A stretch of 64,000 nucleotides of DNA from Octopus sinensis (lineage: Eukaryota): contig NC_043009.1 of the NCBI RefSeq assembly GCF_006345805.1, positions 53,320,001 to 53,384,000 on the forward strand. Reading direction: 5' to 3'. The notes below the pieces were generated by a model. The model was not told the DNA's origin. It ran no database searches and saw only the letters and a program-made list of their open reading frames with translations. Position 1 is the first letter of the stretch, and every line of letters starts with the position of its first letter. Both the position numbers and the translations under genes were made by a program. This document shows positions 4,334 through 47,562 of this stretch, one piece after another.

Positions 4334-5804
4334 CATACTCACATATATATGACACGCGCACCCCACATATATATATATATACACCGTATGTACGAACATA
4401 TGTATTAGAAAAGGCAACGCATTGAGTTAGTATAGTATCATGTTAAGCTGAGATTTTACAACGTTGTTACACTGATTTCACCTTAAACCTTTTAGAATTG
4501 TGCCCGCCTTTGTGTTTTTGTTTAACAAACTCTTATCCTCGTAATCTCCTGAAATCTGACGAATCTAATAACCTTGAATTACGATAAGTCTGTCACCTTT
4601 AAAACTTACATTTCATTGGAAGTTTTATAAGCATTTAAGTGCTTTTGTTGTCTTACGTTAAAAATGATTTCCTGTGGTCGTTAGCTTGGAACTAAAAGTA
4701 CATCAACACTTTTTATGTTTCTTCTGTATGGCGAAGAGCAATCTTCCGAAACGTTAAATTCTTCACTCATCACGACAATAACACGGATCAATCCCTGCTA
4801 TGAACTCACCAATCATTTCGTTGTTATTCTGATATCAAATTTCACTGGTCTTAAAATACCTTAGAATGTCTTACCTTAAACATCTTATCATACATGTTGC
4901 CTTTAAAACAATAAATATAAGTTTGGGAATTAATTATCAACCTATTTAGAATCTGAAACAATCATTTGCAACACTATGTTTTGTTTATTCTGTTTTTATT
5001 TCAATATATTTTGGTCTACCTGTTCGATGTATATACTGACCCAATATGACTTCTCTTTGTGGATTTTGTAACAATTTTAGTAACGCATCAATGTGTAAAT
5101 GGTTCATACATTTATGTGAAAGCAGACTGTAGAGTAAATACAAGAGTTAGATTAAAATGATTACCTTGCTACGTATCACACCACTGTGAGCTCGGGTAAA
5201 TATTTGGTGAACCCGATAGGTTTTAGAAAACATTGCACCGAATGCCAATGAGAATCCTGCAGCGAACAAGAATGCGCGAGTCTGAAAGGAAAGAAAACGA
5301 TAAATTAATATTCCTCAACAGAGGTAGAAAAAAAAGAGGAGTTTCTGTATTGCATAATTTGCGTTTCTGCGTTATTATGCTTCGTCAGCTATGGACAGAG
5401 AACTCGTCGTTCATAGCCCACTAAGAAACGGCCGAGTCTACCCACATCTGTGTGTACACAAACGTTTTACATAAATTGTACACACATATTTTAATCAACG
5501 CTGCTTCTGATGCTTCTCGTTAATTGATCAAACTAGAATAAATTAACGAGAGACACCCGAAGTTTTGCGCATATCAACAAATGTAATATTTTCTTTTGAA
5601 TCATAAAAAACAGGTGTCTCTTATTAGCTATTAATGGTAGCTTACATTTGTAAAGTTATCACTGATAAAGAATACAAACCCTCACACAAGATGTTCGTCT
5701 ATATTCCACATATTTTTCTGTATTCAATAGCAGTTGGATATGCCCCGAAATATATTTCATAACACCCAGTGTAAAACCTATAATATTTGAACATATACAT
5801 ACAT

Positions 5805-7731: not shown

Positions 7732-7779
<48 letters not shown>

Positions 7780-13455: not shown

Positions 13456-13513
13456 ATATATAATATATATATACATATATATATATATATACAAATATAT
13501 ATATACATATATA

Positions 13514-13559
<46 letters not shown>

Positions 13560-13584
13560 ATATATATATATATATAATATATAA

Positions 13585-14555
13585 TATCGATAACTGGCTC
13601 CAGCTCTGAGAGCCCTGCATTGAACCATATATTACTGCATACCTCTCCCGTCTTCTCTCCAGGGAGTAGAGTCTTAGCTGTTTCCCAGTAGCTGAGCTGT
13701 TGCAAAGAGACGATCTTCTTTGTGAATCTTCTCTGGATTGCTTCAAGGTCCGCTGTTAATTTTACACTGGTGGGTGACCATAGCTGTGAGCAGTAATCCA
13801 GGCGGCTGGTCCGCCAGAGGACCATCATGGTTTCCTTATCTCTGGTTCTGAATGTTCTTAGGATCCACCAAGCCAGTCGTCTGCACTTTGTCGCCATCCT
13901 GGTAATGTGCACTTGGAAAGAGGTATCATCACTCATGTCGATACCTAGGTCCCTCACAGACTTAGGCTCTGGGATTGAAATTCCCTGTGAACCTGTAAGT
14001 TTAATATCCTGTAAGTTTAATATTCAGTTTTGGATGCTGGTAGCGCAGGGCCTGGAATTTTTCAGCATTAAACTGCATATTATTATCCTCAGCCCATCTG
14101 TAAATTGAGCCCAACTCCTGCTGCAGGTGTGCAACATCGCTGGGGTTCTGTGTTTTCTGCGAGACTTTCGTATCGTCTGCATAGCTGGCCAGAGTGGCTA
14201 TCAGGGCATTTGAGGGCATATCTGAGAGGGCCACTATAAAATGCAGTGGTCCCAAGACAGTGCCTTGTGGAACACCGCTTACTATTTGTGTATTCATAGA
14301 GGTGGGTGGCTCCATTAGCCACTACTGCCTGACTCCCCTCTTTCAGGAAGTCATGTAACCAGCTATGCCGATGTCCCGCAGTTTGTGGCATATCATACCT
14401 TGTCAAAAGTTTTTGCAAAATCAAGGTATTACGTCCACATTTGATTTGTTGAGTAACCGCCTCAACACCCTGTCATAATGTTGTAAGAGCTGGGTCAGGC
14501 AGCTCCTACCTGGTCGAAAACCATGCTAGGTATCACTCAGCAAGTTATTTTTCAA
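13585..14555 (-). mobile_element. CR1/L2-group LINE reverse transcriptase fragment (frameshifted)
   Basis: HGFRPGRSCLTQLL, SGVPQGTVLGPLHF, YADDTK, SRLDYCSQLWSP and YSLERRRERY motifs across broken frames. Confidence 0.9.
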
Positions 14556-14635
14556 TATATATATTATATATTTATATATGTATATATATTATATGTATTA
14601 TGCGGATATTTATACATATATATATATAAATATAC

Positions 14636-14670
<35 letters not shown>

Positions 14671-14693
14671 TATAAGAATTATGCGGATATATG

Positions 14694-14725
<32 letters not shown>

Positions 14726-14746
14726 AAATATGTATGTATATATATC

Positions 14747-14777
<31 letters not shown>

Positions 14778-14814
14778 TTATGCGGATATATATTATATAT
14801 ATAATATATATATA

Positions 14815-15719
14815 GTTATCAGTAATAATATAGGGTGAAATTAATTAATTTGGAATAATCATTAATTTCACCAAGTAGATTTCGGCATGTAAAAGCCTCA
14901 TTCGAGGAAAGTTTAAGTAATACTAAGTAATTAAGGGTTTAGCAACGATTTGCCTCACCACACACCGAATTTAGAAATAGCAGTCAAAGAGTTATAGCTA
15001 TTCTTTCTACTAAAAGGGAGATCTCGGTAAAACCACAGCACTTGGAAGGCAAACACAGACAAGCAAGAGAGAAGGAAATGACGGCAATCCATCATACAAT
15101 TTTAAGTCACCTACGGACGTACGTTTCGAAATTAAGTTTTAGGAAAGCATAAGAATTAGATAATTATAACTTACCCAACTTCTTTTCTCATCAGCGTAGG
15201 ACACTACAATTATGAATAATTGTATATTAAATTTCGAGATACTAGAAGGCATCATCTCAACTCAGTATCAGAGCGAGCTAAAACCGTTACCAGTATCACC
15301 AAATTCAAAATGTGAATGAAAGTTTGTGTCACCAACCCCTTCCCACCAGCGTGTAGCCAAGACAAGATGTTGCGGTCATTTACTGGGATGAAATATGGTT
15401 ATCAGTAATAATATAGGGTGAAATAATTAATTTGGAATAATCATTAATTTCACCAAGTAGATTTCGGCATGTAAAAGCCTCATTCGAGGAAAGTTTAAGT
15501 AATACTAAGTAATTAAGGGTTTAGCAACGATTTGCCTCACCACACACCGAATTTAGAAAAAGCAGTCAAAGTTATAGCTATTCTTTCTACTAAAAGGGAG
15601 ATCTGGTTTTACCGAGATCTCCCTTTTAGTAGAAAGAATAGCTATAACTCTTTGACTGCTATTTCTAAATTCGGTGTGTGGTGAGGCAAATCGTTGCTAA
15701 ACCCTTAATTACTTAGTAT
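14815..15719 (-). mobile_element. Non-autonomous hammerhead-containing element: 1.36 units of a 583-bp repeat plus a 115-bp inverted copy
   Basis: Direct repeats 14815-15024 and 15398-15604; 15605-15719 is the reverse complement of 14920-15034; TA-tract flanks; no ORF. Confidence 0.85.
15110..15200 (-). ncRNA. Type I hammerhead ribozyme with 60-nt stem II domain
   Basis: RNA reads CCUACG-CUGAUGA-GAAA(N52)UUUC-GAAAC-GUAC-GUC-CGUAGG: intact core, perfect 6-bp stem I, palindromic stem III ACGUACGU, GUC triplet. Confidence 0.85.
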
Positions 15720-15934
15720 ATATATATATATATATATATACATATATTAGAGTCGTCCCACGGTATCAAATCAATTTATAATATATTTTTATGAAGGATA
15801 ATATACAAATGTGAATTTTAAAGAAAGAATTGTAGGTAACCAGAAAAGATCAGTAGTGTGAAAGTTCATAATGATTTAGGTTTGTTAGTGACGTATACTC
15901 TAGGATGAGTAATGATGTGTGACACATAATTCAA

Positions 15935-16025
15935 TATTTGTTTCTATGTATGTATGTATGTATGTATGTATGTATGTATGTATGTATGTATGAATGTATG
16001 TATGTATGTATGTATGTATGTATAT
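15935..16025. repeat. (TATG)n microsatellite
   Basis: Direct reading. Confidence 0.95.
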
Positions 16026-16149
16026 CGATAACTGGCTCCAGCTCTCAGAGCCCAGCATTGAACCAATTTGGGTTTTGCCTTTCTCTCATGCCGAAAATAT
16101 CTATTGATGTCGTATACAAAGCTTCCCTGATATAGTTCCACCTACTTTC

Positions 16150-16458: not shown

Positions 16459-16691
16459 GATGCTGGTCGCTCAGTAATGCTTTTCGCGGAGATTCTTTTC
16501 CTTCTCTCCAGACTTTTTCTTAAATTTTCTTTGAGCGTCAACCGAATGCATTGACTTTGTACATTATTTTGGATTTTGTTGTTTTCCTGTATTCTGTTTC
16601 CATAATTGTTTATATTCTTGATTTGCCTCGCTCTGTCTCAGTCAGTCTCTCTGGCTCTTACTGTCTCGGTATATATGCTGTTCACAAACGC

Positions 16692-19600
16692 CGCGTCTTT
16701 GATCTCTGTCGGCACTCACTTTGATCTCTGTCGGCACCTTCTTTGATATCTGCCGGTACTCTCTTTGATCTCTGTCGGCACTCCCTTTGAGCTCTGTCGG
16801 TACCCTCTTTGATCTCTGTCGGCACCCTCTTTGATCTATGTCGGCATCCTCTTTGATCTATGTCGGCACTCTCTTTGATCTCTGTCGGCACTCTCTTTGA
16901 TCTCTGTCGGCACCCTCTTTGATCTATGTCGGCACTGATCCGGTTTGATCCGGTTTGAACCGGTTTGATCCGCTTTGAACCGGTTTGAACTGGTTTGAAC
17001 CGGTTTGAACCACTTTGAACCGGTTTGGGCCGGTTTGAAGCGGTTTGAAGCGGTTTGGACCGGTTTGAAGCGGTTTGAAGCGGTTTGAAACGGTTTGATT
17101 CGGTTTGAACCGGTTGAAACCGGTTTGATACGGTTTGAACCGGTTTGAACCGGTTTGATCCTGTTCCAATCGGTTTGAACCGGTTTGTCGGCACCGTCTG
17201 TGATCTCTGTCGGCACCCCTTCGATCTCTGTCGACACTCTCTTTGATCTCTGTCGTCACACCCTTTGATCTCTGTCGGCACCCCTTTGATCTCTGTCGGC
17301 ACCCTCTTTGAGCTTTGTCGGCACCCCTTTGATCTCTGTCGGCACACTCTTTGATCTTTGTCGGCACCCCTTTGATCTCTGTCGACACCCCTTTGATCTC
17401 TGTCGGCACCCTTTGATCTATGTCGGCACCCCTTTGATCTCTGTCGGCACCCCTTTGATCTCTGTCGGCACCCTCTTTGATCATTGTCGGCACCACTTTG
17501 ATCTCTGTCGGCACCCCTTTGATCTCTGTCGGCACCCTCTTTGATCTATGTCGGCACTGATCCGGTTTGATCCGGTTTGATCCGCTTTGAACCGGTTTGA
17601 ACCGGTTTGATCAGGTTTGACCCGGTTTGATCCGGTTTAATCCGGTTTAATCCGGTTTGGTCCGGTTAGAACCGCTTTGATCCGGTTTGATCGGGTTTGA
17701 ACCGGTTTGATCCGGTTTGATCCGGTTTGATCCGCTTTGAACCGGTTTGAACCGGTTTGATCCGGTTTGTCGGCACCGTCTTTGATCTGTGTCGGCACCC
17801 CTTTGATCTCTGTCGGCACTCTCTTTGATCTCTGTCGGCACTCTCTTTGATCTCTGTCGGCAGTCTCTTTGATCTCTGTCGGCACCCCCTTTGATCTATG
17901 TCGGCACTTATCCGGTTTGAACCGGGTTGATCCGCTTTGAACCGGTTTGAACCGGTTTAATCCGGTTAGGTCCGGTTGGAACCGGTTTGAACCGGTTTGA
18001 GCCGGTTCAGACCGGTTTGAATCGGTTTGAAGCGGTTTGATCCGGTTTCAACAGGTTCAACCGGTTCAAACCGGATCAAACCGGTTCGAAGCGTATCAAA
18101 CCGGTTCAAACCGGTTCCAACCGGACCTAGCCTGATTAAACCAGATAAAACCGGTTCAAACCGGATCAAACCGGTTCGAAGAGGATCAAACCGGTTCAAA
18201 CTGGATCAATGCCGACATAGATCAAAGAGAGTGCCGACTGAGATCAAAGGGGTGCCGACATAGTTCAAAGGGGGTTCCTGGAGAGATCAAAGGGGTGTCG
18301 ACAGAGATCAAAGGGGTGCCGACAAAGATCAAAGAGAGTGCCGATAGAGATCAAAGGGATGCCGACAGAGATCAAAGGGGTGCCGACAGAGATCAAAGAC
18401 GGTGCCGACAAACCGGTTGCAACCGGACCAAACCGGTTCAAACCAGATCAAACCGGTTCCAACCGGACCAAACATGATTAAACCGGTTCAAACAGGATCA
18501 AACCGGTTCAAACCGGTTCAAAGCGGATCAAACCGGATCAGTGCCGACATAGATCAAAGAGGGTGCCGACAGAGATCAAAGGGGTGCCGACAAAGATCAA
18601 AGAGGGTGCCGACTGAGATCAAAGGGTGCCGACAGAGATCAAAGCGGTGCCGACATAGATCAAAGGGGGGTGCCGACAGAGATCAAAGGGGTGCCGGCAA
18701 AGATCAAAGAGGGTGCCGACAGAGATCATAGGTGTGCCGACAGAGATCAAAGCGGTGCCGACATATATCAAAGGTGTGCCGACAGATCAAAGAGAGTGCC
18801 GACAGAGATCAAAGGGGTACCGACAGAGATCAAAGGGTTGCCGACAGAGATCAAAGAGAGTGACGACAGAGATCAAAGGGGTGCCGACACAGATCAAAGG
18901 CGGTGCCGAGAAACCGGATCAAACCGGTTCAAACCAGTTCATAGCGGATCAAACCGGATCAAACCGGATCAAACCGGATCAAACCGGATCAGTGCCGACA
19001 TAGATCAAAGAGGGTGCCGGCAGAGATCAAAGAGAGTGCCGACAGAGATCAAAGAGAGTGCCGACAGAGATCAAAGGTGTGTCGACAGAGATCAAAGTGG
19101 TGCCGACAATGATCAAAGAGGGTGCCGACAGAGATCAAAGGGGTGCCGACAGAGATCAAAGGGGTGCTGACATAGATCAAATGGTGCCGACAGAGATCAA
19201 AGGGGTGTCGACAGAGATCAAAGGGGTGCCGACAAAGATCAAAGAGTGTGCCGACTGAGATCAAAGGGGTGCCGACAAAGATCAAAGGGGTGCCGACAGA
19301 GATCAAAGGGGTGCCGACAGAGATCGAAGGGGTGCCGAGAGAGATCAAAGAAGGTGCCGACAAACCGGTTTAAACCGGTTGGAACCGGATCAAACCGGTT
19401 TTTACCCGTTTGATCCGTTTCGAACCGGTTTGAACCGGCTTGATCCGGTTTGAACCGATTTTAACCGGTTTAATCTTGTTCGGTCCGGTTGGAACCGGTT
19501 TGAACCGGTTTGATCTAGTTTGAATCGGTTTGATCCGGTTTGGTCCGGTTGGAACCGGTATGAACCGGTTTGATTTGGTTTGAACCGGTTTGATCCGGTT

Positions 19601-21232
19601 TCAACCGGTTCCAACCGGTTTGATCCGGTTTCAACCGGTTCCAACCGGTTTGAACCGGTTCCAACCGGTTCCAACCGGTTTGTCGACACTGTCTTTGATC
19701 TCTGTCGGCACCCCTTTGATCTTTGTCGGCACCCCTGTGATCTCTGTCGGCACTCTCTTTGATCTCTGTCGGCACTCTCTTTGATCTCTGTCGACACACT
19801 CTTTGATCTATGCCGGCACTGATCCAGTCTGATCCGCTTTGAACGGTTTGATCTGCTTTGAACCGGTTTGAACCAGTTTGAACCGGTTTGAACCGGTTTA
19901 ATTCGGTTGGAACCGGTTGGAACCGGTTTGATACGGCTGGAACCGGTTTGAACCGGTTCCAACCGGTTTGAACCGGTTTGTCGGCACCGTCTTTGATATA
20001 TGTCGGCACCCCTTGGTCTCTGTCGGCACTCTCTTTGATCTCTGTCGGCACCCTTTGATCTCTGTCGGCACTCTGATTGATCTCTGTCGGCACTCTCTTT
20101 GATCTATGTCGGCACTGATCCGGTTTGATCCGGTTTGAACCAGTTTGATCCGCTTCGAACCGGTTGGAACCGGTTTGAACCGGTTTGATCAGGTTTGAAC
20201 CGGTTTGACCCGGTTTGGTCCGGTTGGAACCGGTTTGAACCGGTTTGATTTGGTTTGAACCGGTTTGATCCGGTTCCAACAGGTTTGAACCGGTTTGTCG
20301 GTACTGTCTTTGATCTCTGTCGGCACCCCTTTGATCTTTGTCGGCACCCCTTTGATCTTTGTCGGCACCCCTTTGATCTCTGTCGGCACTCTCTTTGATC
20401 TCTGTCGGCACTCTCTTTGATCTCTGTCGACACACTCTGTGATCTATGTCGGCACTGAACCGGTCTGAATCAGTTTGAACCGGTTTGATCCGCTTTGAAC
20501 CGGTTTGAACCAGTTTGGACCGGTTTGAACCGGTTTAATTCGGTTTGGCCCGGTTGGAACCGGTTTGATACGGCTCGAACCGGTTTGTCGGCACCGTCTA
20601 TGATCTCTGTCGGCACCCCTTTGATCTCTGTCGGCACTCCCTTTGATCTCTGTCGGCACCCCCTTTGATCTCTGTCGGCACCCCTTTGATCTCTGTCAGC
20701 ACCCCTTTGATCTCTGTCGGCACCCTCTTTGATCTCTGTCGGCACACTCTCTGATCTCTGTCGACACCGTCTTTGATCTCTGCCGGCACCGTCTTTGATC
20801 TTTGAACTGGTTTGATCCGGTCTGAACAGGTCTGATCCGGTTTAAACCAGTTTGATCCGCTTTGATCCGGTTTGAAAAGGTTTGATCCGGTTTGAACCGG
20901 TTTGGTCCGGTTGGAACCGTTTTGATCCGGTTTGAACCGGTATGACCCGGTCCTAACCGGTTTGAACCGGTTTGTCGGCACCGTCTTTGATCTCTGTCGG
21001 CACCCCTTTGATCTCTGTCGGCAACCCCTCTGATCTCTGTCGGCACCCTCTGTGATCTCCGTCGGCATCCCCTTTGATCTTTGTCGGCACCCTCTTTGAT
21101 CTCTGTCGGCACCCTCTTTGATCTCTGTCGGCACCCCCTTTGATCTCTGTCGGCATCCTCTTTGATCTATGTCGACACACTCTTTGATCTCTGTCGGCAC
21201 CGTCTTTGATCTCTGCCGGCACCGTCTTTGGT
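16692..21232. repeat. Higher-order satellite of alternating 19-22-bp and 10-bp monomer blocks, with inverted middle segment (about 18051-19400)
   Basis: Monomer A CTCTTTGATCTCTGTCGGCAC; monomer B CCGGTTTGAW; both read as reverse complements in the middle block. Confidence 0.95.
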
Positions 21233-21520
21233 CTTTAAACAACATTTCCAGGGAATTTTACATTTCAATTCTCATCACCATTATCATCTCCTTTGTTATT
21301 GTTGTCGTCGTCATTCTTATTGTTGCTGTTGTTGGTGGTTGTGGTTGGAGTGGCTGTGGAAATAGAACTTCAAATCCCCAAATAAGATATTTTTTATTGA
21401 CTCTTCTCTTGACTTAGCTAGTATTTTCCTGCTATCGTCATAATGAGTACCTTTAGTATTATTGTTGTTGTTAGTTGGTAGTGGTCGTAGCAGAAGAATT
21501 AGTACTTCTAAGTATTAGTA

Positions 21521-22520
21521 TTATTGTTTATTTAGCTTGGGTTTGAATATATTAATAAAGTTCTTTTCTCTGATTTTTCTCACTATTTCACTTGAACAGT
21601 GTAGTTTGTAGAATGTAAATACCATAAATATTTTCAGACCACATGTTGCTAGGTGGTTACTGAAAAGTATCTAATGGACATCTGGGTCTCTAATTTGCTG
21701 CTGGTGCACACATGAAAGTTCTGATTGTGCATTTCCAGTGTGATCCACATATAGTTCTTCACATTTCGGGCATTTGATGCAGTAAATTAAATTTCTGCTT
21801 TTGCAGTTCATATTTGCATTTGTGAATATTTTCCCGGCTTTTGTGTTTATAAATTGGTTGGTATGTATGAATTGGCATGTGTCACATCGACTATCATTGC
21901 ATTATAATACAGTGAATGATTGGTCTTCATTTGCTAAAGTCAAGTTTTTAGGCTGTCTTTTACTAAGAACCATACCTCGATCTGTAATTATATGTTAATT
22001 CCTTACTTTGAGCAATGATTGGTAGGTTTGCTTTGGCAATGTTAATGATATTCAGGTGACATGGTTTGTGTATTACTATAAATGGTATAACTTGTTCTTG
22101 TTTCCTCTTCTCTGGTTTGTCCTCACTTGTTGCATGGGTACTTTTATAGCTCTATGTATGCTATTTTCTATAAGTAGAGACGGGTATTTTTGTTCGAGCA
22201 AAAATTCACTTAGTTTTATTAGGCGTTTGTTCCCGACATTCGCATTTTCTACAATGGTACAAATTCTTCTGGCTAGGCAGTATGGGATGTTGCGTTTTCT
22301 CTGTGGTGGATGGCACGACTTAAAATTCAGGTGCTGATGTGTGTCCGCGTGTTTGTAGTAAATATCTGTGGTAATGGTGGTGTCCTTTTTAGTTATTATT
22401 ATATCTAGGAATGGTAATTTGGTACTATTCATCTCCTTTGTAAGTTGGAGAGAAAGGTGTAGGTTGTTCAGGAGGATATTGAACTCTGCCAGAGTATTTA
22501 GAGATTCTGTCTAGATTATG
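21521..22520 (-). mobile_element. Penelope-like element: RT thumb plus GIY-YIG endonuclease remnant
   Basis: LPFLDIII..TDIYYKHADTHQHLNFKSCHP..NIPYCLARRICTIV, then SKRQPKNL, CNDSRCDTC, NCKSRNLIYCIKCPKCEELYV, REKNFINIFKPKLN; stop at 21521-21523. Confidence 0.9.
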
Positions 22521-23798
22521 AAACAACTATTATTCGACAAATACGCAATTGAGGGCATATGTGCAAAATAAGAATTAGTACTCGAATCCCAAAGAAGTGA
22601 TAGAAGTTGACATCGTTGGAATTTGTGCTGTGTGTAAAATGCCGGAATAATTACAGCGAGGCGTTTTGTACGACGATCTAACGATTAACGATTCTGCCAA
22701 ATAGCTGCCATGTTGTCAAAGCAACCAGAACTGAAACCTTATCGTTGAGTCAGGAGAAAAACTTATATTCCCATGTGTTTTATAATAGGATGCATACTTA
22801 TTAATTCATGTTGCATTATCCAACAGTTTTTTGATGATTTGAAATATTACAAATCAGCCTTAGTATGAAAAGTACACATAATAATTGTGAGATAGCTTTT
22901 GGCTTTTTGAGAGAATAAGAGGAATCACTTTGAAGAATTTCTAATCTTCTTAGACCTTTATCTAAAAAACAGTATTGTGTTACATGCTATGTTGAACAAG
23001 AGAATATATGTATATATTTTATATACGGTTGCACGCAACAGACAGATTATGAACACCTAGTTGCCAAGAATGTGCTGCATTATGCAAGCTGTCTATTCAA
23101 CTTACTTGCGTGGTTAGTAACACAGGTTTTATAAACAGTGGCTAAAATCTATAGACCTGTTCTCTAGATATATACAGTTTGGCATGGAAACAGAACTCCA
23201 TTAATGTACTGGTAAATCAGTATTTGAAAAAGTTGCCAAAAAATTCATATGCAAATATGCAAATAGAATTACTTAATCTATCAGTAATAGAACGCTTATA
23301 AAATTTTTCTATGTGGACAGTTACGGAATAATTATGTAGCGGACGATATCCCAACAGAGGATCGAAACTAGTCCGGCTGATTGCATTTCTTTCTTGTCCA
23401 CAGATATATATTGCGAATAGTGACAAGCTGTTTTTTTAATACGACTATTACATACAGTGCTCTGTAAAAATCTCTCTCTTTTTATAATAACTATAATATG
23501 TACCTACAGAATATGTATATATATGTGTGTATGTGCGTGTGTGTGAGTGTGTGTAATGTACGTACATGCATGTGTGTATATATGTATGCATGAATTTATG
23601 TGTTTATCAGCAGATGAGGTGGGAAAATAGGATCAATGTAGCTGATATCTGTGCGTCATATCGAATTCCTTTTCAGCTGAAATCTGTTGAAAATAAATTA
23701 CATAGAGGCAATACCACAACACCACCAGGCAGTATACCAAACTAATAGCAAAAACAACAGCAGCAATAACAACAACAACAACAATAAAAATTATGATG

Positions 23799-24962: not shown

Positions 24963-25079
24963 ATAATACTACTACTACTACTACTATTACTACTACTACT
25001 GATGATGATGAGGATGATGATGATGACGATGTTGATGATAAAAATAATAATAATAATAATGAACAACAACAACAACAAC

Positions 25080-25114
<35 letters not shown>
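24918..25114. repeat. (ACT)n-(GAT)n-(AAC)n-(AAT)n compound microsatellite
   Basis: Direct reading. Confidence 0.95.
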
Positions 25115-25703
25115 GGCAGTGGCTCTCATGGGTAGTACCAGGCAGTGGCTCTCATGGGTAGTACCAGGTAGTGGCTCTCATGGCTTCTGATCTTAACTGA
25201 TTGGAAGTGTTATCATGTACATTGTTTTGTCTTGGTATAAAAGATGGGCTACAGCAAATATTCTGCTCAATACCACAGATTTGCTTGTCAGTTGTTTGAC
25301 CATAACCAGTTGAGCATGTCCCTTAGTGGCTGACGATATGTGCATCTCTGATCACGAGCAGAAGTAGTGGGGGAGCATCATAGCCATGTGTTGAGAGGGA
25401 TTCTTTGGGGTTTGAATAGTTCACCTCTGGAAACATGGGTGGTTCTTTCAACATCCTTAAACAACCCTTATTCAGGGACCGTTTGAGCGGGATGGGCTAC
25501 TTAACCTGAAGAAAATTCTAACTGGGCCCCACCTGCAAGGTCATGTGCTGTTTATTTTGATATGAGATCACCATGTCGCGCACATATGATTGTGATGCAT
25601 GTGCCTGGTGTACCTTTATCAGACGGGTAGTCATGATGGGTATATTGGGCTTCGTATATTTTACCCCAGTGTCACTTTGATGGCATGAACTGCTCTCTCA
25701 CTC
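25115..25703 (+). mobile_element. Non-coding interspersed repeat flanked by (AAT)n, copy 1
   Basis: Aligns end to end with 25778-26307; a fragment also follows (AAT)n at about 54638-54690; orientation assumed from the tail. Confidence 0.75.
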
Positions 25704-25719
25704 AATAATAATAATAATA

Positions 25720-25777
<58 letters not shown>

Positions 25778-25778
<1 letters not shown>

Positions 25779-26307
25779 GCCCTGATGCAGTACCAGGCAG
25801 AGGCTCTCGTGGATTCTGATCTTAACTGGTTGTAAGTGTTATCATGTACATTATTTTATCTTGGTAAAAAAAAAAGATGGGCTACAGCAAACATTCTGCT
25901 CAATACCACAGATTTGCTTGTCAGTTGTTTGACCTTTACCAGTTGACCATGTCCCTTAATGGCTGACGATATGTGCATCTCTGATCATGAGCAGAAGTAG
26001 TGGAGGAGCATCATAGCCATGTGTTGAGAGGGGTTCTTTGAGGTTTGAATAATTCACCTCTGGGAACATGGGTGTTTCTTTCAACATCCTTAAACAACCC
26101 TTATTCAGGGACCTTTTGAGCGGGATGGGTTACTCTAACTGGGCCCCACCTGCAAGGTCATATGCTGTTTATCTTGATATGAGATCATCATGGTTGTGAT
26201 GCATGTGCCTAGTGAAGCCTTATCACACGGGTAGTCATGATGGGTATACTGGGCTTCGTATATTTTACCCCAGTGTCACTTTGATGGCATGCACTGCTCT
26301 CTCACAC
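25778..26307 (+). mobile_element. Non-coding interspersed repeat flanked by (AAT)n, copy 2
   Basis: Diverged copy of 25115-25703 with two short internal deletions. Confidence 0.75.
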
Positions 26308-26342
<35 letters not shown>

Positions 26343-26350
26343 TAATAATA

Positions 26351-26540
26351 AGGAATGAAAAATGGTGCTGAAACCTATTTGAAAATGATACCAGGCTTAC
26401 CATCCCTACAGGAAGTGCAAAAAATCGTGTTAACTGGAACGGCTCATGTACTGAGAAGAGCATTATCGCTGTGAAAACAACCTCCATTCATGAATTTATT
26501 TATTTATTAATATTTTAAATTCAATATTTACCAGTGAATT
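26351..26540 (+). mobile_element. Extreme 3' end of a Dong/R4-like LINE
   Basis: 26355-26474 reads MKNGAETYLKMIPGLPSLQEVQKIVLTGTAHVLRRALSL*, homologous to the C-terminus of the 511-1130 fragment; follows (AAT)n. Confidence 0.75.
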
Positions 26541-29215: not shown

Positions 29216-29301
29216 AACACATTGATGCTAGAGCAGCTTGCTTATATGCTGCATAAAGTTTGGCAGTATAAGAATATGTATATATATATATATATATATA
29301 T

Positions 29302-29467
29302 AGGCGCAGGGGTGGCTGTGTGGTAAGTAGCTTGCTAACCAACCACATGGTTCCGGGTTCAGTCCCACAGCGTGGCATCTTGGGCAAGTGTCTTCTGCTA
29401 TAGCCCCGGGCCGACCAATGCCTTGTGAGTGGATTTGGTAGACGGAAACTGAAAGAAGCCTGTCGTA

Positions 29468-29518
<51 letters not shown>

Positions 29519-29738
29519 ATGTGTGTTTGTGTGTCTGTGTTTGTCCCCCTAGCATTGCTTGACAACCGATGCTGGTGTGTTTACGTCCCCGTCACTTAGC
29601 GGTTCGGCAAAAGAGACCGATAGAATAAGTACTGGGCTTACAAAGAATAAGTCCCGGGGGTCGATTTGCTCGACTAAAGGCGGTGCTCCAGCATGGCCGC
29701 AGTCAAATGACTGAAACAAGTAAAAGAGTAAAAGAGTA
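29302..29738 (+). mobile_element. SINE family A, full length
   Basis: Head and tail as at 7574-7988; sits in TA tract. Confidence 0.9.
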
Positions 29739-29910
29739 TATATATATTTATATATACAAAGAGCAATAAAGATTCAAGTTAATTTAAAAAAATTTACTTG
29801 AATATGGTACCTAACTTAGATGCACCAAAAAAAAAAAAACTATACTGATTTAACAATACAGTAATGTGGGGTGATTATAAGCGAGAAAGAAGCAACAAGA
29901 ATGGATAGGT

Positions 29911-30001
29911 TTTTAGTACGATCGTTTCATACAAGGACAGGTTTTATTAAAAGTTGCAAAGATTACAGCATATAAACGAGTCCCGTACTCATCAGCTAAA
30001 A
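29911..30001 (-). ncRNA. Type I hammerhead ribozyme, 60-nt stem II domain (left arm copy)
   Basis: Reverse complement of 30415-30505. Confidence 0.8.
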
Positions 30002-30414
30002 TACATGTAAGTTCTCTAGACATCCTAGGTTTGAGGCTATACTCATGAAGTAATGTAGATAATTAAACAGATTTCTAAAGTTCATTAAAGTTCTTTAAAG
30101 ATGATGTACAGTCTTATCACAGAATTTTAAAAAGTTTGATAGCATCACAGAGAAGGTGACCTAATCCATATGAATTCCATAGATATGATGAGGGATTATA
30201 TAATGTGAGTATATAATCCCTCATCATATCTATGGAAATTCATATGGATTAGGTCACCTTCTCTGTGATGCTATCAAAACTTTTTAAAAATTCTGTGATA
30301 AGACTGTACATCATCTTTAAAGAACTTTAATGAACTTTAGAAATCTGTTTAATTATCTACATTACTTCATGAGTATAGCCTCAAACACTAGGATGTCTAG
30401 AGAACTTACATGTA

Positions 30415-30505
30415 TTTTAGCTGATGAGTACGGGACTCGTTTATATGCTGTAATCTTTGCAACTTTTAATAAAACCTGTCCTTGTATGAAACGATCGTAC
30501 TAAAA
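30415..30505 (+). ncRNA. Type I hammerhead ribozyme, 60-nt stem II domain (right arm copy)
   Basis: UUUUAG-CUGAUGA-GUACGGGAC(N41)GUCCUUGUAU-GAAAC-GAUC-GUA-CUAAAA: intact core, 6-bp stem I, palindromic stem III ACGAUCGU, GUA triplet; stem II closed by G-U. Confidence 0.8.
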
Positions 30506-30812
30506 ACCTATCCATTCTTGTTGCTTCTTTCTCGCGTATATTTATATATATATATATATATGTAATGACAGTATTTTCTTAAATAGCAAAATTAGAATTA
30601 TCAAGAAACACAGTCTCAAATAGCGCGGAAACCAAGATAAAGTTCAGCTGTAGACACATATTTATGCATTACGATATCTTGATATGCAAATATAGTCACA
30701 TAAAATATAATAGACTTCTTAAAATTCACCATAAATCATGTCAGGTAGGAAAAAAAAATATATATCCATCCACCAATCCATGCACTCATGCATACATAAT
30801 GGTAATAATACT

Positions 30813-30971: not shown

Positions 30972-31104
30972 AGTGCAAACAAATGGATAATGATCTCGTC
31001 GCATCGTCTTCTCGTCAAAACCAAGTAGCATGAGGGCAAGATAGACTAGTATACATCCAATAACTGCAACATTGTTCAGTATGGGACTGGATAATTTAAT
31101 GTAT
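30972..31104 (-). CDS. Internal exon of a GABA-B-receptor-like class C GPCR (ICL1-TM2-ECL1)
   Basis: Acceptor ttcttctag, donor gtaagt; 133 bp, phase 2 to phase 0; (R)YIKLSSPILNNVAVIGCILVYLALMLLGFDEKTMRRDHYPFVCT fits the GABBR pattern IKMSSPxxNNxxxxGxxxxY..GxD..CT; subunit not assignable. Confidence 0.88.
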
Positions 31105-31968
31105 CTAGAAGAAAACAAGAATATATATATAAAATAATAAATTTAAAAGAATGGACTATTGTAGTTAATCCGTGCTGTATGTATATATGTATGTATATAT
31201 GTATGCATGTAGGTATGTACGTATGTATGTAGTTAATGTTTTGGACAATAATGAGAAAACATAAAATGAAATACAATAGAAACAATGTAGGAATATATTG
31301 AATATATTTTCGATTTAATAATGAAACACTCCCTTCATATATCCAGCTGTGTACATATGTGAGAAACAATTACAGTTATATTTAACATCACTACCTAGAC
31401 TGCGTGTGTCTTTAGCGGAGGGCGGACTATATCAAAGTATTAGGATGAGGTCTCTGATCTATTTCTAACTTCCTCTCATCTTCTCATCAGTATCGGATTC
31501 CTTGAAATGGAGGTGCAGGTTGGCTCTACTACATTGACCTCGAATAGGTCTAAGAAAATACGTCTTCGCCAAAACCGAAAGCAGGGCACTAAGTAAATAC
31601 ACAGAATTTACTACTTCGTCTCTAGATATGAGATAATATCTCTTTAATGCCACAAAAGCTGTAACATAAAATCCGAACAAAACATTTTATTATTACATCT
31701 TGAAATAATATTTCGCGCCTCTATTGTTCTGACATCAGAATGGCCTCTCTCGTGAAACGTTTCCATGAGCTCTTTCCAAATAAATTAATACACTGTAATC
31801 CAATAAACTTGAATCACACTTTACAACAGTGATGTGTTATCTCAAGTATCAACAAAGGGAATATCTTTCTTTCTCTTCTATAGTAAATTCCAACATAATC
31901 ATTCATATAGCTTCATCAGACGCAAACATATACGTTTCATCAGAGACGCACATGCTCACACACACACA

Positions 31969-34511: not shown

Positions 34512-35140
34512 TATACAAGGGGCGGTGAATAAACTGTCATCTAAATTACGCAAAAATGAATATAACAATGACTTCTAATTTAAAAAAAATATTTTTATCA
34601 AAATTACCTAATAATACCTCGAAATACTAAAGAGTAAATTTATTCAATAAAATTGTTATTGGCTTCAACAACGGCCTCCAGACGACTTCGGAACCTCCTG
34701 CAACTCTTCTGGAGGCTCTTCTTGTTTAAGTTGGTGAATGCTGTCATAATTCTTGCCTTCAGTTCATTATTGATACTACAAGGAGTTTTGTTGGTATCTC
34801 AATGAACTGCGTGCCATACATAATAATCAAGGGAGTTGCAGTCTGAGGAGTTAGGTGGGCAGATGTTAGGGGTAATGTGGTTACACAAATAGTCTGACAG
34901 ACATGACTGGGTTCTCTTGTTTGTATGGCATGGTGCAGAGTCCTGTTGCCAGACATAGGGTTTTACAGCAGCCACTCTCTTGACCCAGGACAGCACTATC
35001 TTCTCCAGGCACTTGATGTAGGCGTCCGTGTCGAGTCTGAGGACGTATGAGAAGATGAATGGAGGCATAACGTCGCCATTACTAGTGATCATGCCAAACA
35101 CCATGATGTTGACTGGGTGTCTGAATTTTATCAATCTCGG
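34512..35140 (-). mobile_element. DD37D (maT-like) transposase C-terminal fragment
   Basis: MVFGMITSNGDVMPPFIF..YVWQQDSAPCH..PPNSSDCNSLDYYVW. Confidence 0.85.
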
Positions 35141-35374
35141 TACATGTCGTCAGATTGACACCCAAACAATCTGAAATATTCGTATTGGAACTTTTTGTGC
35201 GAATGCCAAGCAGTACAACAGTTCGTTTCCAAATTTCTGGCGGAGTGAAATGCGCCATGGTGCTATTTTTCTCACATACGTTGCCCAGTTGACCCTATCA
35301 TACTGTATTTGTATAGTCGACAAAATCAATGACAACAATTTAGCCGTCGCAGCCTGTATGTATATATATATCTA

Positions 35375-42016: not shown

Positions 42017-42582
42017 TTGGGTTGTCCGGAAAGTTCGTGCCGATTTTTAAAGGAAAGAAAAAGGTCAATAAATACATGCCGTTACATTTTTAATCAACCA
42101 AATATGAACCATTTTGTTGCACAATGCGTCTCCATCTTTCCTTTAACTTGAAAATACCCTCTTCCCAGAATTGAGGTGGTTTCATGGCAAAGAATTCATC
42201 AAGGTATTTTTTTACGTCATCCAAGGAATTGAAATTTTTACCATTAACACTATTCTGCAGAGACCTGAATAAGAGGAAATCCGAAGGAACAATATCTGGT
42301 GAATATGGAGGGTGGGGTAACACATCCCAGCCGAGCTGCAGCAATTTTTGTCTGGTTCCCAAAGCATCAAGTGCCGAAAATGAACTTTCTTATCTTCCAT
42401 TTTAACGGGTTACAGATTTAACACAGGTTATAGGAACATAAATCTTCTTCCACGAAAAGATAGCTTGAACTGTGCTCTAAATGGAGGTGTAGTCAAATCC
42501 TATTTTATGGACTCAACCATGTTCTAAAATAAGTCAAAAGGTAAGCTACTATTAATCGGCACGAACTTTCCGGACAACCCAA
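42017..42582 (-). mobile_element. Internally deleted mariner (DD34D) with perfect 29-bp TIRs and TA duplication
   Basis: TIR TTGGGTTGTCCGGAAAGTTCGTGCCGATT at both ends; MEDKKVHFRHLMLW joined to TRQKLLQLGWDVLPHPPYSPD..ERWRRIVQQNGSY*. Confidence 0.93.
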
Positions 42583-45043: not shown

Positions 45044-45080
45044 ATGTGTGTGCGTGTGTGAGCGTGTCTGTGTGTCTATG

Positions 45081-45232
45081 TGGGAGTGGCTGTATGGTAA
45101 GTAACTTGCTTTCCAACCACATGGTTCCGGGGTCAAAGCCAATGCGTGGCACCTAAGGCAAATGTCTTCTACTATAGCCTCGGGTCGAACAAAACCTTGT
45201 GAGTGGCAACTGACGAAAACTGAATGAAGTTA

Positions 45233-45276
<44 letters not shown>

Positions 45277-45515
45277 GTATGTGTATGTACCCCTGTATGT
45301 ATGTGTGCGTATGTGTGTTTATGTGTATTTGTGTGTATCTCTTTGTCCCTCCCATCATCACCTGACAACCGATGTTCGCATATTTATGTCCCTGTAAACT
45401 AGCGGTTCGGCAGAATAAGTACTAGGCTTTCAAAGAAAAGATTCTGGTATCGATTTGTTCGACTAAAGGTGGTGCTCTAGCGCGGCCTCAATCAAATGAC
45501 TGTAACAAGTAAAAA
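45081..45515 (+). mobile_element. SINE family A, diverged
   Basis: Head, internal TA/TG tract and tail all align with other copies. Confidence 0.85.
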
Positions 45516-45584
45516 ATGAAAGTATAACTACACACCCACGCGCGCGTACACACGCACGCACACACACACACACACACACATATT

Positions 45585-46071: not shown

Positions 46072-47275
46072 TATTCAAATGGTATTTGGTGACGTATGCA
46101 TTTGTGTAATTAATTTTATTTGACTAATTTTTATTGAACTTCTTCTTCAGAAAATTACACTGACAGGCCCTACGCTTGCTAATGAAATGAAAACGCATGC
46201 TGTGATTGTGGCTTTGAAGATTATGAGTGGTGATTTACAAATTTCTCGTTTTATGAAGGTTGCAGGATCTTTTGTCCACAAGATTCGGTGTGAGTTAAAG
46301 AAAGATGGAAGCGTATTACCCGTATCAAAATTTAAAAATTAAAAAAAAGACACATTCCATACGCTTTGATTCTATCAGGACACATCAGAAAATCAATGAA
46401 GTTAATTGCAAAACAATTTCTTGTGTCAGAAAAAAAAAACAATCGGAATTGTTGTGTATGAAGATATCAGATACAAATCTTACGTGATGAGGAAAGGTCA
46501 ATTCATGTCAGAGAAAAACAAAAGAAAACAGTTTAATCAGATCCAAAAACTTTTGAGCAAACTTAAAAATCCATCAGATCATGGTGTGATTTGGTTTTTC
46601 TCAGATGCGAAAAACTTTGACGAGGACCAGAAAACTAACAGAAGAAATGACTGATGGCTATGTGCAGACCCTTCTGAGGCCCCAAAGAGTAATGCGCCCA
46701 AAGTTTCATGAAAGTATCATGGTCTTGGGTTAGCAACGAAGGGCATGTGATGCCTCCACAAGGCCTTAGGGTGAATGCTGCTGCGTACATTGATGTCCTG
46801 AATAATGTTGTTAAGCCTTGGATCAACAGTGTATGCAATGAAAGGATTTATGTCTTTCAACAAGATTCTGCACCATTGCAAAAGGCTCAAATGACACAAG
46901 AATATATGGCCGACAATTGTGCATGATTAGATCCCCCCTTCAACATTTGGCTTACTAATTCTCCAGACCTCAATCCACAGGGCTACTATGCCAGTGAACA
47001 GCCGCATAGCACCAAAGATTATTTGAAAGCCGGAATAATTTCAATCATGTTTGATATGAACAAGGACCAATTAATCAGAGCTTGTAAACGATTTCAACCC
47101 CAAGGAGAGGTTGTTAATGATGTATATGGTGGTTTTATTAAATGAAATTATTAAATTGATAATTTAGCTTTATGTTTATGTTATTTATATAAAGATACAA
47201 TTTTTTTTTTCTGTTATTATATTAAGCGTTTCATTTTAAAACATAAATCTGTACTCAAATATCGTCCGCACCCTG
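46070..47275 (+). mobile_element. Decayed DD37D (maT-like) transposon, left TIR lost
   Basis: KRHAVIVAL, WFFSDAKNF, SNEGHVMPP, YVFQQDSAP, NSPDLNP; right end AATATCGTCCGCACCCTG|TA. Confidence 0.85.
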
Positions 47276-47294
47276 TATATATACGTATATCATT

Positions 47295-47524: not shown

Positions 47525-47562
<38 letters not shown>

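What the first reader, a model, noticed from the sequence alone, without database searches (positions are those of the whole stretch)
29876..30540. 665-bp palindrome carrying two mirror-image intact hammerhead ribozymes
The arms (327 and 331 bp, 7-nt spacer) are almost identical, so the duplication is recent. Each arm holds a full type I hammerhead: stem I UUUUAG/CUAAAA, CUGAUGA, a 60-nt stem II domain, and GAAAC-GAUC-GUA. Transcription from either direction therefore meets one sense ribozyme and its perfect antisense. Inverted terminal duplications and hammerheads are known traits of Penelope-like elements and retrozymes. A non-coding unit that puts the ribozyme on both strands inside a foldback able to silence it is, by inference, unusual.
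Basis: partly seen in the sequence, partly recalled or inferred. Interest (0 to 1): 0.9.

Follow-up and report, generated by a model that had tools for sequence, protein, structure and literature searches.

The report
Head-to-head hammerhead retroelement pair, octopus intron
The 665-bp palindrome is real and carries two mirror-image hammerhead ribozyme motifs, but it is best read as the ordinary head-to-head insertion scar of a small Penelope-type retroelement in a receptor gene intron, not a new device.

Summary
Arms 29876-30202 and 30210-30540 are 326/331 identical around a 7-nt spacer. Each arm carries a type-I hammerhead motif reading outward, at 30415-30505(+) and 30001-29911(-). Rfam Hammerhead_1 aligns end to end, but at 22 bits against a gathering score of 34, because stem II carries a 54-nt insertion.

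A second, unrelated hammerhead element at 14810-15719 has identical 91-nt spacing. It keeps all 12 hammerhead base pairs, six through changes on both sides, and it also has a head-to-head inverted junction. These two elements are the only local palindromes in the window outside a satellite block.

Both elements abut (TA)n. A Penelope-like element (PLE) ORF remnant lies at 21.7-22.7 kb, with its best hit in Octopus sinensis.

The literature describes exactly this for PLEs and their non-autonomous retrozyme derivatives: abundant head-to-head inverted repeats with palindromic junctions, (TA)n targets, and dimer-dependent hammerheads with a palindromic helix III.

The palindrome lies 431 nt inside a ~25.7-kb intron of a GABA-B-receptor-like gene. 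In any transcript that spans it, a -558 kcal/mol hairpin would bury the ribozyme.

Verdict: a new member of a known kind, of modest interest. No sibling copies could be retrieved, and self-cleavage is untested.

The parts
29876..30202 (-). Left arm: one ~330-nt copy of the non-coding hammerhead element. Its sense strand is the minus strand, with the 5' end at the palindrome centre and the 3' end at 29876.
   Evidence: 326/331 identity to the reverse complement of the right arm. GC is 32%.
30203..30209 (.). 7-nt spacer ATGTGAG at the head-to-head junction. The inner ends of both arms are the self-complementary TATATA.
30210..30540 (+). Right arm: the second copy. Its sense strand is the plus strand, with the 5' end at the centre and the 3' end at 30540, abutting (TA)n.
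30415..30505 (+). Hammerhead HH1 in the right arm. Stem I is 30415-30420 with 30500-30505. The core CUGAUGA is 30421-30427. The 60-nt stem II domain is 30428-30487. GAAA is 30488-30491. Helix III plus loop, C-GAUC-G, is 30492-30497. The predicted cleavage site is after A30499.
   Evidence: Descriptor scan. Rfam RF00163 full-length alignment at 22.0 bits. Pair comparison with HH2.
29911..30001 (-). Hammerhead HH1 in the left arm, the mirror copy with identical sequence. The predicted cleavage site is after A29917, reading the minus strand.
30537..30562 (.). (TA)n-rich flank at the right boundary, the probable microsatellite target. The left boundary keeps only TATA. No clear target-site duplication is visible.
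   Evidence: Craig et al. 2021 (PMC8557442) report (TA)n targeting and frequently indiscernible TSDs.
14810..15603 (-). Element 2: an unrelated hammerhead element made of 1.37 tandem units of 582 nt. Its 3' end abuts a TA-rich array.
   Evidence: direct repeat 14810-15024 / 15393-15604 at 97.7% identity.
15604..15719 (+). Element 2, inverted 116-nt fragment joined head-to-head at an AGATCT palindrome. It is 100% identical to the 3'-proximal unit (14920-15035) and differs from the unit it physically abuts.
15110..15200 (-). Hammerhead HH2: CCUACG / CUGAUGA / 60-nt stem II domain / GAAA-C-GUAC-G-UC / CGUAGG.
   Evidence: Rfam RF00163 at 23.6 bits, E=0.001. The predicted homodimer MFE is the double hammerhead.
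21674..22684 (-). 5'-truncated, frameshifted Penelope-like ORF remnant comprising an HTH_animal linker region and a GIY-YIG-like CxxC...IYCIKCPKCEELYVDHTG segment. It shows that PLEs have been in this genome region.
   Evidence: best hit Octopus sinensis LOC115230173, 67% identity, PF26215; a relative pairs HTH_animal with a weak GIY-YIG hit. Pfam itself is negative on the window fragments.
30972..31105 (-). Host exon (7tm_3 profile positions 27-74) with an AG acceptor and a GTAAGT donor. The palindrome begins 431 nt into the following intron.
5164..5280 (-). Next host exon (7tm_3 profile positions 71-110). The intron between this exon and the previous one (~25.7 kb) holds the palindrome, Element 2, the satellite block and the PLE remnant.

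Best explanation
The palindrome is two copies of one ~330-nt, AT-rich, non-coding hammerhead-bearing retroelement unit joined 5'-to-5' (head-to-head), with both 3' ends facing outward. The unit is a Penelope-like-element terminal (pLTR-like) sequence or non-LTR retrozyme. It inserted at a (TA)n tract in an intron of a GABA-B-receptor-like gene of an Octopus-like cephalopod.

Shown: the anatomy, the hammerhead motif, the outward orientation of both copies, a second element with the same kind of junction, a PLE ORF remnant nearby, and the intronic position.

Inferred: the structure arose in a single PLE-type target-primed reverse transcription event. There are two possible routes. Both target strands may have been nicked and each used to prime a cDNA of the same short RNA, with the two cDNAs running to the same RNA 5' end. 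Alternatively, the first cDNA may have self-primed at the TATATA at its end and copied itself back.

The hammerhead is the usual metazoan type-I kind. Its positions 15.1-16.1 form an 8-nt palindrome (ACGAUCGU), so efficient cleavage is expected only when two sense copies pair, as in tandem transcripts. The palindrome offers one sense and one antisense copy per transcript and folds into a ~330-bp perfect hairpin. This copy is therefore most likely a catalytically silent, dead-end insertion. Its main consequence is a long dsRNA and DNA hairpin in a host intron.
For: 1. Palindrome anatomy and outward-reading hammerheads.
2. HH1 and HH2 are unrelated in sequence (23/78 identical outside the core). 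They share exact 91-nt spacing, a 6-bp helix I, a 4-bp helix II closing a 60-nt domain, and an 8-nt palindrome at 15.1-16.1. All 12 pairs are kept, 6 through changes on both sides. Chance expectation is 0.023 hits per window.
3. A window self-comparison shows that the only local palindromes outside the satellite block are the two hammerhead elements.
4. Element 2 has tandem units plus an inverted fragment that copies the 3'-proximal unit and not the adjacent one. That is what two cDNAs of one RNA end, or one long-range template switch, would give.
5. Both elements abut TA-rich microsatellite sequence.
6. A PLE ORF remnant lies in the window, with its best hit in Octopus sinensis.
7. Literature. 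PLE pLTRs may be direct or inverted; an inverted 5'-truncated copy often sits next to the 5' end; (TA)n is a common target; TSDs are often indiscernible (PMC8557442). Head-to-head inverted repeats with palindromes at the junction are abundant, and pLTRs alone suffice for mobilisation in trans (PMC3846280). A purified PLE protein cleaves and extends both target strands, and hammerhead cleavage is not needed for insertion (PMC11167929). Metazoan type-I hammerheads have a 6-bp helix I, a 4-bp helix II and a 1-2-bp helix III with a palindromic loop, and work as dimers (PMC4209133). Retrozyme monomers are ~150-450 bp with low GC (PMC7229834). Retrozymes are related to PLE pLTRs (bioRxiv 10.64898/2026.07.22.740005).
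8. The full transcript folds as a -558 kcal/mol hairpin that covers the ribozyme.
Against: No other copy of this family could be retrieved. So the unit's true ends, its copy number and any link to a specific autonomous PLE are unknown.

The arm has no detectable similarity to the PLE remnant or to Element 2 outside the hammerhead core.

No target-site duplication is visible.

The exactly equal arm lengths need an added assumption: either run-off at a defined RNA 5' end or self-priming.

The hammerhead is below Rfam's gathering score, has G.U at 10.1-11.1, and its fold is not the MFE.

Self-cleavage, transcription and the assembly's correctness were not testable here.
Confidence: 0.72

Rival explanations
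1. DNA-level inverted duplication. A single, ordinary retrozyme or PLE-tail insertion was later duplicated in inverted orientation, either by replication template switching or by hairpin-capped break repair, with no involvement of reverse transcription.
For: The arms are near-identical with a short spacer, which is the standard signature of fold-back duplication. The short palindrome TATATA at the centre could seed a strand switch.
Against: The palindrome ends at the same element position on both sides and directly abuts TA-rich sequence. A second, unrelated hammerhead element 15 kb away has its own head-to-head junction. These two are the only local palindromes in 64 kb outside the satellite. 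That association is expected from the element's own integration chemistry and not from random fold-back events. In Element 2 the inverted piece is not a copy of the adjacent DNA.
Confidence: 0.13
2. Assembly or sequencing artefact. A fold-back chimeric long read, or a mis-join, created a palindrome that is not in the genome.
For: All four indels shorten one arm and three sit in T homopolymers, a pattern typical of long-read consensus error. PLE tandem/inverted structures are known to trouble assemblies (PMC8557442).
Against: A fold-back chimera would keep mirroring the flank. Here complementarity stops sharply at 29876 and 30540, with unrelated unique flanks on both sides, inside a contiguous intron between two collinear exons with canonical splice sites. 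Element 2 shows an analogous but asymmetric junction that a read fold-back cannot produce. [quoted passage not shown]
Confidence: 0.07
3. Fold-back DNA transposon or MITE. The 330-bp arms are terminal inverted repeats of a class II element that happens to carry a hammerhead.
For: It has a perfect long-TIR architecture with a tiny loop, and TA dinucleotides lie at both borders.
Against: There is no discernible TSD beyond the TA-rich target. No other copy lies in the window, whereas the SINE family has seven copies. The ends do not resemble Tc1/mariner-type termini (from memory). Element 2 pairs the same hammerhead type with tandem units, which is a retroelement signature.
Confidence: 0.04
4. 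A selected functional unit. The palindrome would be a hairpin-RNA locus that yields small RNAs against the retrozyme family, or a structure that modulates splicing or editing of the GABA-B-receptor-like pre-mRNA, with the ribozyme kept masked on purpose.
For: The host gene's transcription would produce the ~330-bp hairpin, which lies 431 nt from a 5' splice site. PLE inverted structures do give strand-switching small-RNA profiles in rotifers (PMC3846280).
Against: Nothing here shows conservation, expression or selection. The structure is fully explained as an insertion by-product. Long perfect palindromes are generally unstable (general knowledge), which suggests that this one is young rather than maintained.
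Confidence: 0.04

Closest known systems
Penelope-like element insertions with inverted pseudo-LTRs (head-to-head inverted 5'-truncated copy); Arkhipova et al. 2013 (PMC3846280), Craig et al. 2021 (PMC8557442)
   Same: The orientation is head-to-head, with a short palindrome at the junction. A hammerhead lies in the terminal non-coding repeat. The target is TA-rich microsatellite sequence, and no clear TSD is visible. The arms are near-identical.
   Different: There is no RT/GIY-YIG ORF between or beside the arms. The two arms are equal in length and make up the whole insertion. Similarity of the arm to the pLTR of an autonomous PLE could not be shown.
Metazoan non-LTR retrozymes; Cervera & de la Pena 2020 (PMC7229834), Li et al. 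2026 preprint
   Same: The unit is ~330 nt, AT-rich (32% GC) and non-coding, and it carries one type-I hammerhead with a weak palindromic helix III. The size matches mussel (350-390 bp) and axolotl (330/350 bp) monomers. Element 2 in the same window is in partial tandem.
   Different: The defining direct tandem arrangement is replaced here by an inverted pair. The location is intronic, whereas the vertebrate survey's abstract reports exclusion from introns. The stem II domain is 60 nt instead of a 4-bp helix with a small loop.
Dimer-dependent type-I hammerheads of newt satellite 2, Schistosoma and other metazoan repeats (Forster et al. 1988, cited in PMC4209133); Rfam RF00163
   Same: The catalytic core is CUGAUGA...GAAA. 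Helix I is 6 bp. Helix III has the GAAAC-NNNN-GUH form with a palindromic tetraloop. RF00163 aligns end to end.
   Different: Stem II carries a 54-56-nt insertion, which drops the score below the gathering threshold (22-24 vs 34 bits). HH1 has G.U at 10.1-11.1.
LINE-1 twin-priming 5' inversions (general knowledge, not tested here)
   Same: In both cases an inverted retroelement segment is created during target-primed reverse transcription because both target strands are used as primers.
   Different: Twin priming gives an inverted 5' segment joined to a direct 3' segment of different sequence content. It does not give a perfect palindrome of the same segment.

Membership tests
Hammerhead ribozyme type I (Rfam RF00163) | Conserved catalytic core (C3-U4-G5-A6-N7-G8-A9, G12-A13-A14, A15.1-U16.1, H17) in type-I order | tested here: met
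   CUGAUGA ... GAAA ... U-A in HH1 and U-C in HH2.
Hammerhead ribozyme type I (Rfam RF00163) | Three helices supported by comparison of sequences | tested here: met
   HH1 and HH2 keep 12/12 pairs, 6 through changes on both sides, at 29% background identity. This rests on only two independent sequences.
Hammerhead ribozyme type I (Rfam RF00163) | Score at or above the family's gathering threshold (34 bits) | tested here: not met
   HH1 scores 22.0 bits and HH2 23.6 bits. Neither is reported in the whole-window search. The shortfall comes from the 54-56-nt stem II insertion.
Hammerhead ribozyme type I (Rfam RF00163) | G10.1-C11.1 base pair | tested here: not met
   HH1 has G.U and HH2 has G-C.
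Hammerhead ribozyme type I (Rfam RF00163) | Mg2+-dependent self-cleavage after H17 | not testable with these tools
   This needs in vitro transcription. Related minimal PLE hammerheads cleave poorly, and only as dimers (PMC4209133).
Metazoan non-LTR retrozyme | Type-I hammerhead in a short (150-450 bp), low-GC, non-coding unit | tested here: met
   The arm is 331 nt at 32% GC, and its ORFs are 57 aa or shorter.
Metazoan non-LTR retrozyme | Direct tandem repetition, so that transcripts carry two or more sense ribozymes | tested here: not met
   The palindrome is an inverted pair. Element 2 meets the criterion partly, with 1.37 units but only one hammerhead.
Metazoan non-LTR retrozyme | Expression as circular RNA | not testable with these tools
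   No transcriptome data are available.
Penelope-like element (autonomous) | ORF with a PLE reverse transcriptase and a GIY-YIG endonuclease | tested here: not met
   There is no such ORF in or next to the palindrome. A separate PLE ORF remnant lies 7 kb away at 21674-22684.
Penelope-like element insertion architecture (pLTR-type, possibly mobilised in trans) | Head-to-head inverted copy with a palindrome at the junction | tested here: met
   described in PMC3846280.
Penelope-like element insertion architecture (pLTR-type, possibly mobilised in trans) | Microsatellite ((TA)n) target | tested here: inconclusive
   The right end abuts ~25 nt of TA-rich repeat, while the left end keeps only TATA. 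Both ends of Element 2 abut TA arrays. No empty site is available.
Penelope-like element insertion architecture (pLTR-type, possibly mobilised in trans) | Optional 30-40-bp 'tail' at one end | tested here: inconclusive
   Each arm extends ~35-41 nt beyond the predicted cleavage site. Without a family consensus, a tail cannot be told apart from the body of the element.
Penelope-like element insertion architecture (pLTR-type, possibly mobilised in trans) | Sequence similarity of the unit to the pLTR of an autonomous PLE in the same genome | not testable with these tools
   No cephalopod genome is searchable by DNA. The two fetched loci (L001, L002) have no match.
MITE / fold-back DNA transposon | Terminal inverted repeats plus a fixed-length target-site duplication | tested here: not met
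   Inverted repeats are present, but no TSD is discernible. Multi-copy evidence is unavailable.

The most novel reading that the evidence does not exclude
Octopus genomes may hold a distinct, so far unannotated subclass of type-I hammerheads. Its members would have a fixed 60-nt stem II domain: a 4-bp helix II closing a long imperfect hairpin that replaces the usual loop 2. They would escape Rfam's thresholds. Their head-to-head insertions in neuronal-gene introns would create ~330-bp perfect RNA hairpins. Those hairpins would mask the ribozyme and act as substrates for ADAR or Dicer, feeding editing or small-RNA silencing of the family.
Probability: 0.12. Interest if true: 0.55.

Novelty: new member of a known kind. 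Interest (0 to 1): 0.3.

Why it matters
For genome annotation, cephalopod introns carry hammerhead-bearing PLE/retrozyme-type elements that standard Rfam scans miss, because a ~55-nt insertion in stem II pushes them below threshold.

For mechanism, the two elements in this window are clean natural examples of the head-to-head junctions that PLE integration leaves. Element 2 is the more informative: its inverted piece copies the 3'-proximal unit rather than the adjacent one. That fits the in vitro finding that a PLE protein nicks and extends both target strands.

For the host, a 665-bp near-perfect palindrome lying 431 nt from a splice donor of a GABA-B-receptor-like gene is a potential source of long dsRNA and of DNA fragility. 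Nothing here shows that it has been co-opted.

Tried and rejected
1. Rfam over the whole window at gathering thresholds gave nothing. At E<=10 over 821 nt it gave only spurious miRNA-hairpin matches to the palindrome centre. Hammerhead_1 appeared only in 151-211-nt searches.
2. BLAST of the arm against the window found no other copy.
3. Exact-protein look-ups of the 57-aa ORF that crosses the hammerhead, and of a flanking 98-aa ORF, returned nothing on record.
4. A protein homology search with the arm ORF found no candidates. The search with the PLE endonuclease fragment gave one hit, on a 515-bp contig, which was useless for context.
5. The family-specific hammerhead pattern found 0 matches in viral contigs and in JGI metagenomes. 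The generic 60-nt-stem-II pattern gave 3 metagenome hits, all chance matches in GC-rich contigs with 0-2 bp of stem I, and 0 hits in viral contigs.
6. The Octopus sinensis locus L001 and the ENA locus L002, both fetched through the PLE fragment, hold no hammerhead and nothing similar to either element.
7. The MAFFT alignment of HH1 and HH2 was mis-registered. I replaced it with an ungapped comparison.
8. GAAACGATCGCA at 50282-50293(-) looked like a decayed relative, but it has no CUGAUGA upstream, so I treated it as chance.
9. Pfam did not recognise the PLE fragments in the window. Their assignment rests on the HTH_animal-bearing homologues and on motifs I recognise from memory.
10. I looked for a target-site duplication by eye. 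Only a GTAATG hexamer occurs on both sides, at unequal distances, so I rejected it.

Full report
**Observation**

The window holds a 665-bp near-perfect palindrome at 29876-30540. The left arm is 29876-30202 (327 nt), the spacer is ATGTGAG, and the right arm is 30210-30540 (331 nt). The arms are 326/331 identical, with one substitution five bases from the outer end and four single-base indels. All four indels shorten the left arm, and three lie in T runs.

Each arm carries the motif UUUUAG-CUGAUGA-(60 nt)-GAAA-C-GAUC-G-UA-CUAAAA. The sense copies are at 30415-30505 on the plus strand and 30001-29911 on the minus strand. Both therefore read from the centre towards the outer ends, so the two copies are joined 5'-to-5' (head-to-head).

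**Is the hammerhead more than chance?**

- A strict type-I descriptor required at least 5 bp of helix I, the core, a closed helix II, GAAA, a short closed helix III and U-H. It gives three hits in the window, against 0.023 per simulated window. None of 300 simulations gave a palindromic helix III.
- Rfam's Hammerhead_1 model is silent at gathering thresholds and in an 821-nt permissive search.
- Given only 151 nt, the same model aligns end to end to exactly 30415-30505 at 22.0 bits. The gathering score is 34. The E-value of 0.0025 applies to that small search and would be about 1 at window scale. The shortfall comes from a 54-nt insertion in stem II.

**A second hammerhead element**

The third descriptor hit is the most informative result. 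At 15200-15110 on the minus strand lies CCUACG-CUGAUGA-(60 nt)-GAAA-C-GUAC-G-UC-CGUAGG, which Rfam aligns at 23.6 bits.

- HH1 and HH2 are unrelated in sequence, with 23/78 identical bases outside the core.
- They have identical 91-nt spacing.
- All 12 hammerhead base pairs are kept, six of them through changes on both sides.
- In both, positions 15.1-16.1 form an 8-nt palindrome, ACGAUCGU or ACGUACGU.
- Both 60-nt domains fold into long imperfect hairpins closed by a 4-bp helix II.

This is the canonical metazoan type-I layout reported in PMC4209133: a 6-bp helix I, a 4-bp helix II, and a 1-2-bp helix III with a small palindromic loop, active as a dimer when a second copy is nearby. The difference here is that loop 2 is replaced by a ~52-nt insertion.

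HH2's predicted homodimer is the classic double hammerhead with an 8-bp intermolecular helix III. HH1 is weaker. It has an A/U-rich helix I and G.U at 10.1-11.1, and its hammerhead fold sits 5 kcal/mol above the MFE.

**What the second element shows about the junction**

HH2 sits in an element spanning 14810-15719. On its sense (minus) strand it consists of 1.37 tandem units of 582 nt, preceded by a 116-nt inverted fragment joined head-to-head at an AGATCT palindrome. Both ends abut TA-rich arrays.

The inverted fragment is 100% identical to the 3'-proximal unit. It differs from the unit it physically abuts at every diagnostic position. So it is not a snap-back copy of adjacent DNA. It looks like a second copy of the same RNA 3' region, or the product of a long-range template switch.

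A self-comparison of the whole window shows that these two hammerhead elements are the only local palindromes outside a satellite block. The inverted junction therefore goes with the element type rather than with the locus.

**Context**

- A 5'-truncated, frameshifted Penelope-like ORF remnant lies at 22684-21674 on the minus strand. Its best homologue is an Octopus sinensis protein at 67% identity carrying Pfam HTH_animal. A relative pairs that domain with a weak GIY-YIG hit. This places the window in an Octopus-like cephalopod and shows that PLEs have been in the region.
- Three collinear minus-strand exons match 7tm_3 profile positions 27-74, 71-110 and 108-185, and match GABA-B receptor subunit 2 (E=7.7e-20). 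The two boundaries I read have canonical splice sites.
- The palindrome starts 431 nt into the ~25.7-kb intron between the exons at 30972-31105 and 5164-5280. Element 2, the satellite block and the PLE remnant lie in the same intron.

**Comparison with what is known**

- PLE pseudo-LTRs may be direct or inverted. Insertions often carry an inverted 5'-truncated copy next to the 5' end. (TA)n is a frequent target, TSDs are often indiscernible, and such structures trouble assemblies (PMC8557442).
[quoted passage not shown] They interpret this as self-priming, and they show that pLTRs alone suffice for mobilisation in trans (PMC3846280).
- A purified PLE protein cleaves and extends both target strands. 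Hammerhead cleavage is not required for insertion (PMC11167929).
- Metazoan non-LTR retrozymes are low-GC tandem units of 150-450 bp with a type-I hammerhead (PMC7229834). They are related to PLE pLTRs.
- Cephalopods carry PLEs, and the giant squid annotation lists 235 Hammerhead_1 loci.

**Most likely explanation (confidence about 0.72)**

The palindrome is a head-to-head pair of one ~330-nt PLE-terminal or retrozyme-type unit, created in one PLE-style reverse-transcription event at a TA-rich site. Either two cDNAs were primed from the two nicked target strands and ran to the same RNA 5' end, or one cDNA self-primed at its terminal TATATA.

The small differences between the arms, which are mostly homopolymer slips, could be polymerase errors made during that event, later mutations, or consensus errors in the assembly.

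Because this hammerhead type needs a second sense copy, and any transcript across the palindrome folds into a -558 kcal/mol hairpin, this copy is most likely catalytically silent. The steps from anatomy to mechanism are inferred, not shown.

**Rivals**

| Rival | Confidence | Main point |
|---|---|---|
| Later DNA-level fold-back duplication of a single copy | 0.13 | Disfavoured by the association of inverted junctions with both hammerhead elements and by Element 2's non-adjacent template |
| Assembly artefact | 0.07 | Disfavoured by the sharp boundaries, unrelated flanks and intact surrounding gene structure, but raw reads were not available |
| MITE or fold-back transposon | 0.04 | No target-site duplication |
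| Selected hairpin-RNA or regulatory unit | 0.04 | No evidence of conservation or expression |

**Limits**

- No sibling copy of the family could be retrieved by any route. The unit's true ends, its copy number and its autonomous partner are therefore unknown.
- Membership in the retrozyme family fails on the defining tandem arrangement.
- Membership in RF00163 fails on score.
- What stands is that the structure works like, and was most likely made like, a PLE-type insertion.

**Verdict**

The arrangement is a known by-product of PLE-type insertion rather than an unusual design. I rate it a new member of a known kind, interest 0.3.

Noticed in passing
window 14810-15719: A second, sequence-unrelated hammerhead element. 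It has 1.37 tandem units of 582 nt on the minus strand, plus a 116-nt inverted fragment joined head-to-head at an AGATCT palindrome. HH2 lies at 15200-15110(-), and both ends abut TA-rich arrays.
   Followed up: yes
window 30972-31105(-), 5164-5280(-), ~1193-1480(-): Three collinear exons of a GABA-B receptor subunit 2-like class C GPCR (7tm_3). The two boundaries I read have canonical splice sites. The intron between the first two exons is ~25.7 kb and holds all the repeats discussed in this report.
   Followed up: partly
window 21674-22684 (-): A 5'-truncated, frameshifted Penelope-like ORF remnant with an HTH_animal region and a GIY-YIG-like segment. Its best hit is Octopus sinensis LOC115230173 at 67% identity. 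No hammerhead was detected downstream of it.
   Followed up: partly
window ~16650-21260: A 4.6-kb satellite block of alternating 21-22-mer (TGTCGGCACCCCTTTGATCTC) and 10-mer (AACCGGTTCA-like) arrays. It is GC-rich (45-51%). The 21-mer arrays switch strand at about 18210 and switch back at about 19363. The block lies directly downstream of the PLE remnant.
   Followed up: no
window 7575-7987, 29281-29755, 45070-45527, 47274-47643, 47674-48123, 56851-57290, 62526-62961: Seven copies, in both orientations and 66-92% identical, of a ~420-450-bp SINE-like repeat ending in TA/TG microsatellite. One copy ends ~120 bp upstream of the palindrome.
   Followed up: no
window 13523-14472 (-): A LINE-type reverse transcriptase fragment (Pfam RVT_1, E=1.5e-10, with ...SGVPQGTVLGP...YADD...). 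It is separated from Element 2 by a TA-rich 81-nt-period array at 14555-14814.
   Followed up: partly
window 13494-13627 and 15933-16065: A ~135-nt direct repeat (79% identical; the 44-nt core is 95% identical) that brackets the LINE fragment, the TA array and Element 2. Each copy follows a microsatellite.
   Followed up: no
window 25043-26351: About two tandem copies of a 661-bp unit at 84% identity, with a repeated ORF (PIPLKRSLNKGCLRMLKE...). Its identity is unknown.
   Followed up: no
window 46148-47278 and 55303-56462; also 42093-42409(-) and 34802-35149(-): Diverged ~1.2-kb repeats (66% identical) and other fragments whose ORFs look to me like DDE (Tc1/mariner-type) transposase remnants. 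Pfam gave no hit at E<=0.01.
   Followed up: partly
window 30135-30277: Several Rfam miRNA-precursor models (MIR1435, mir-556, mir-136) match the palindrome centre at E down to 1e-9, all below their gathering scores. These are generic hairpin matches and not evidence of a miRNA gene.
   Followed up: yes
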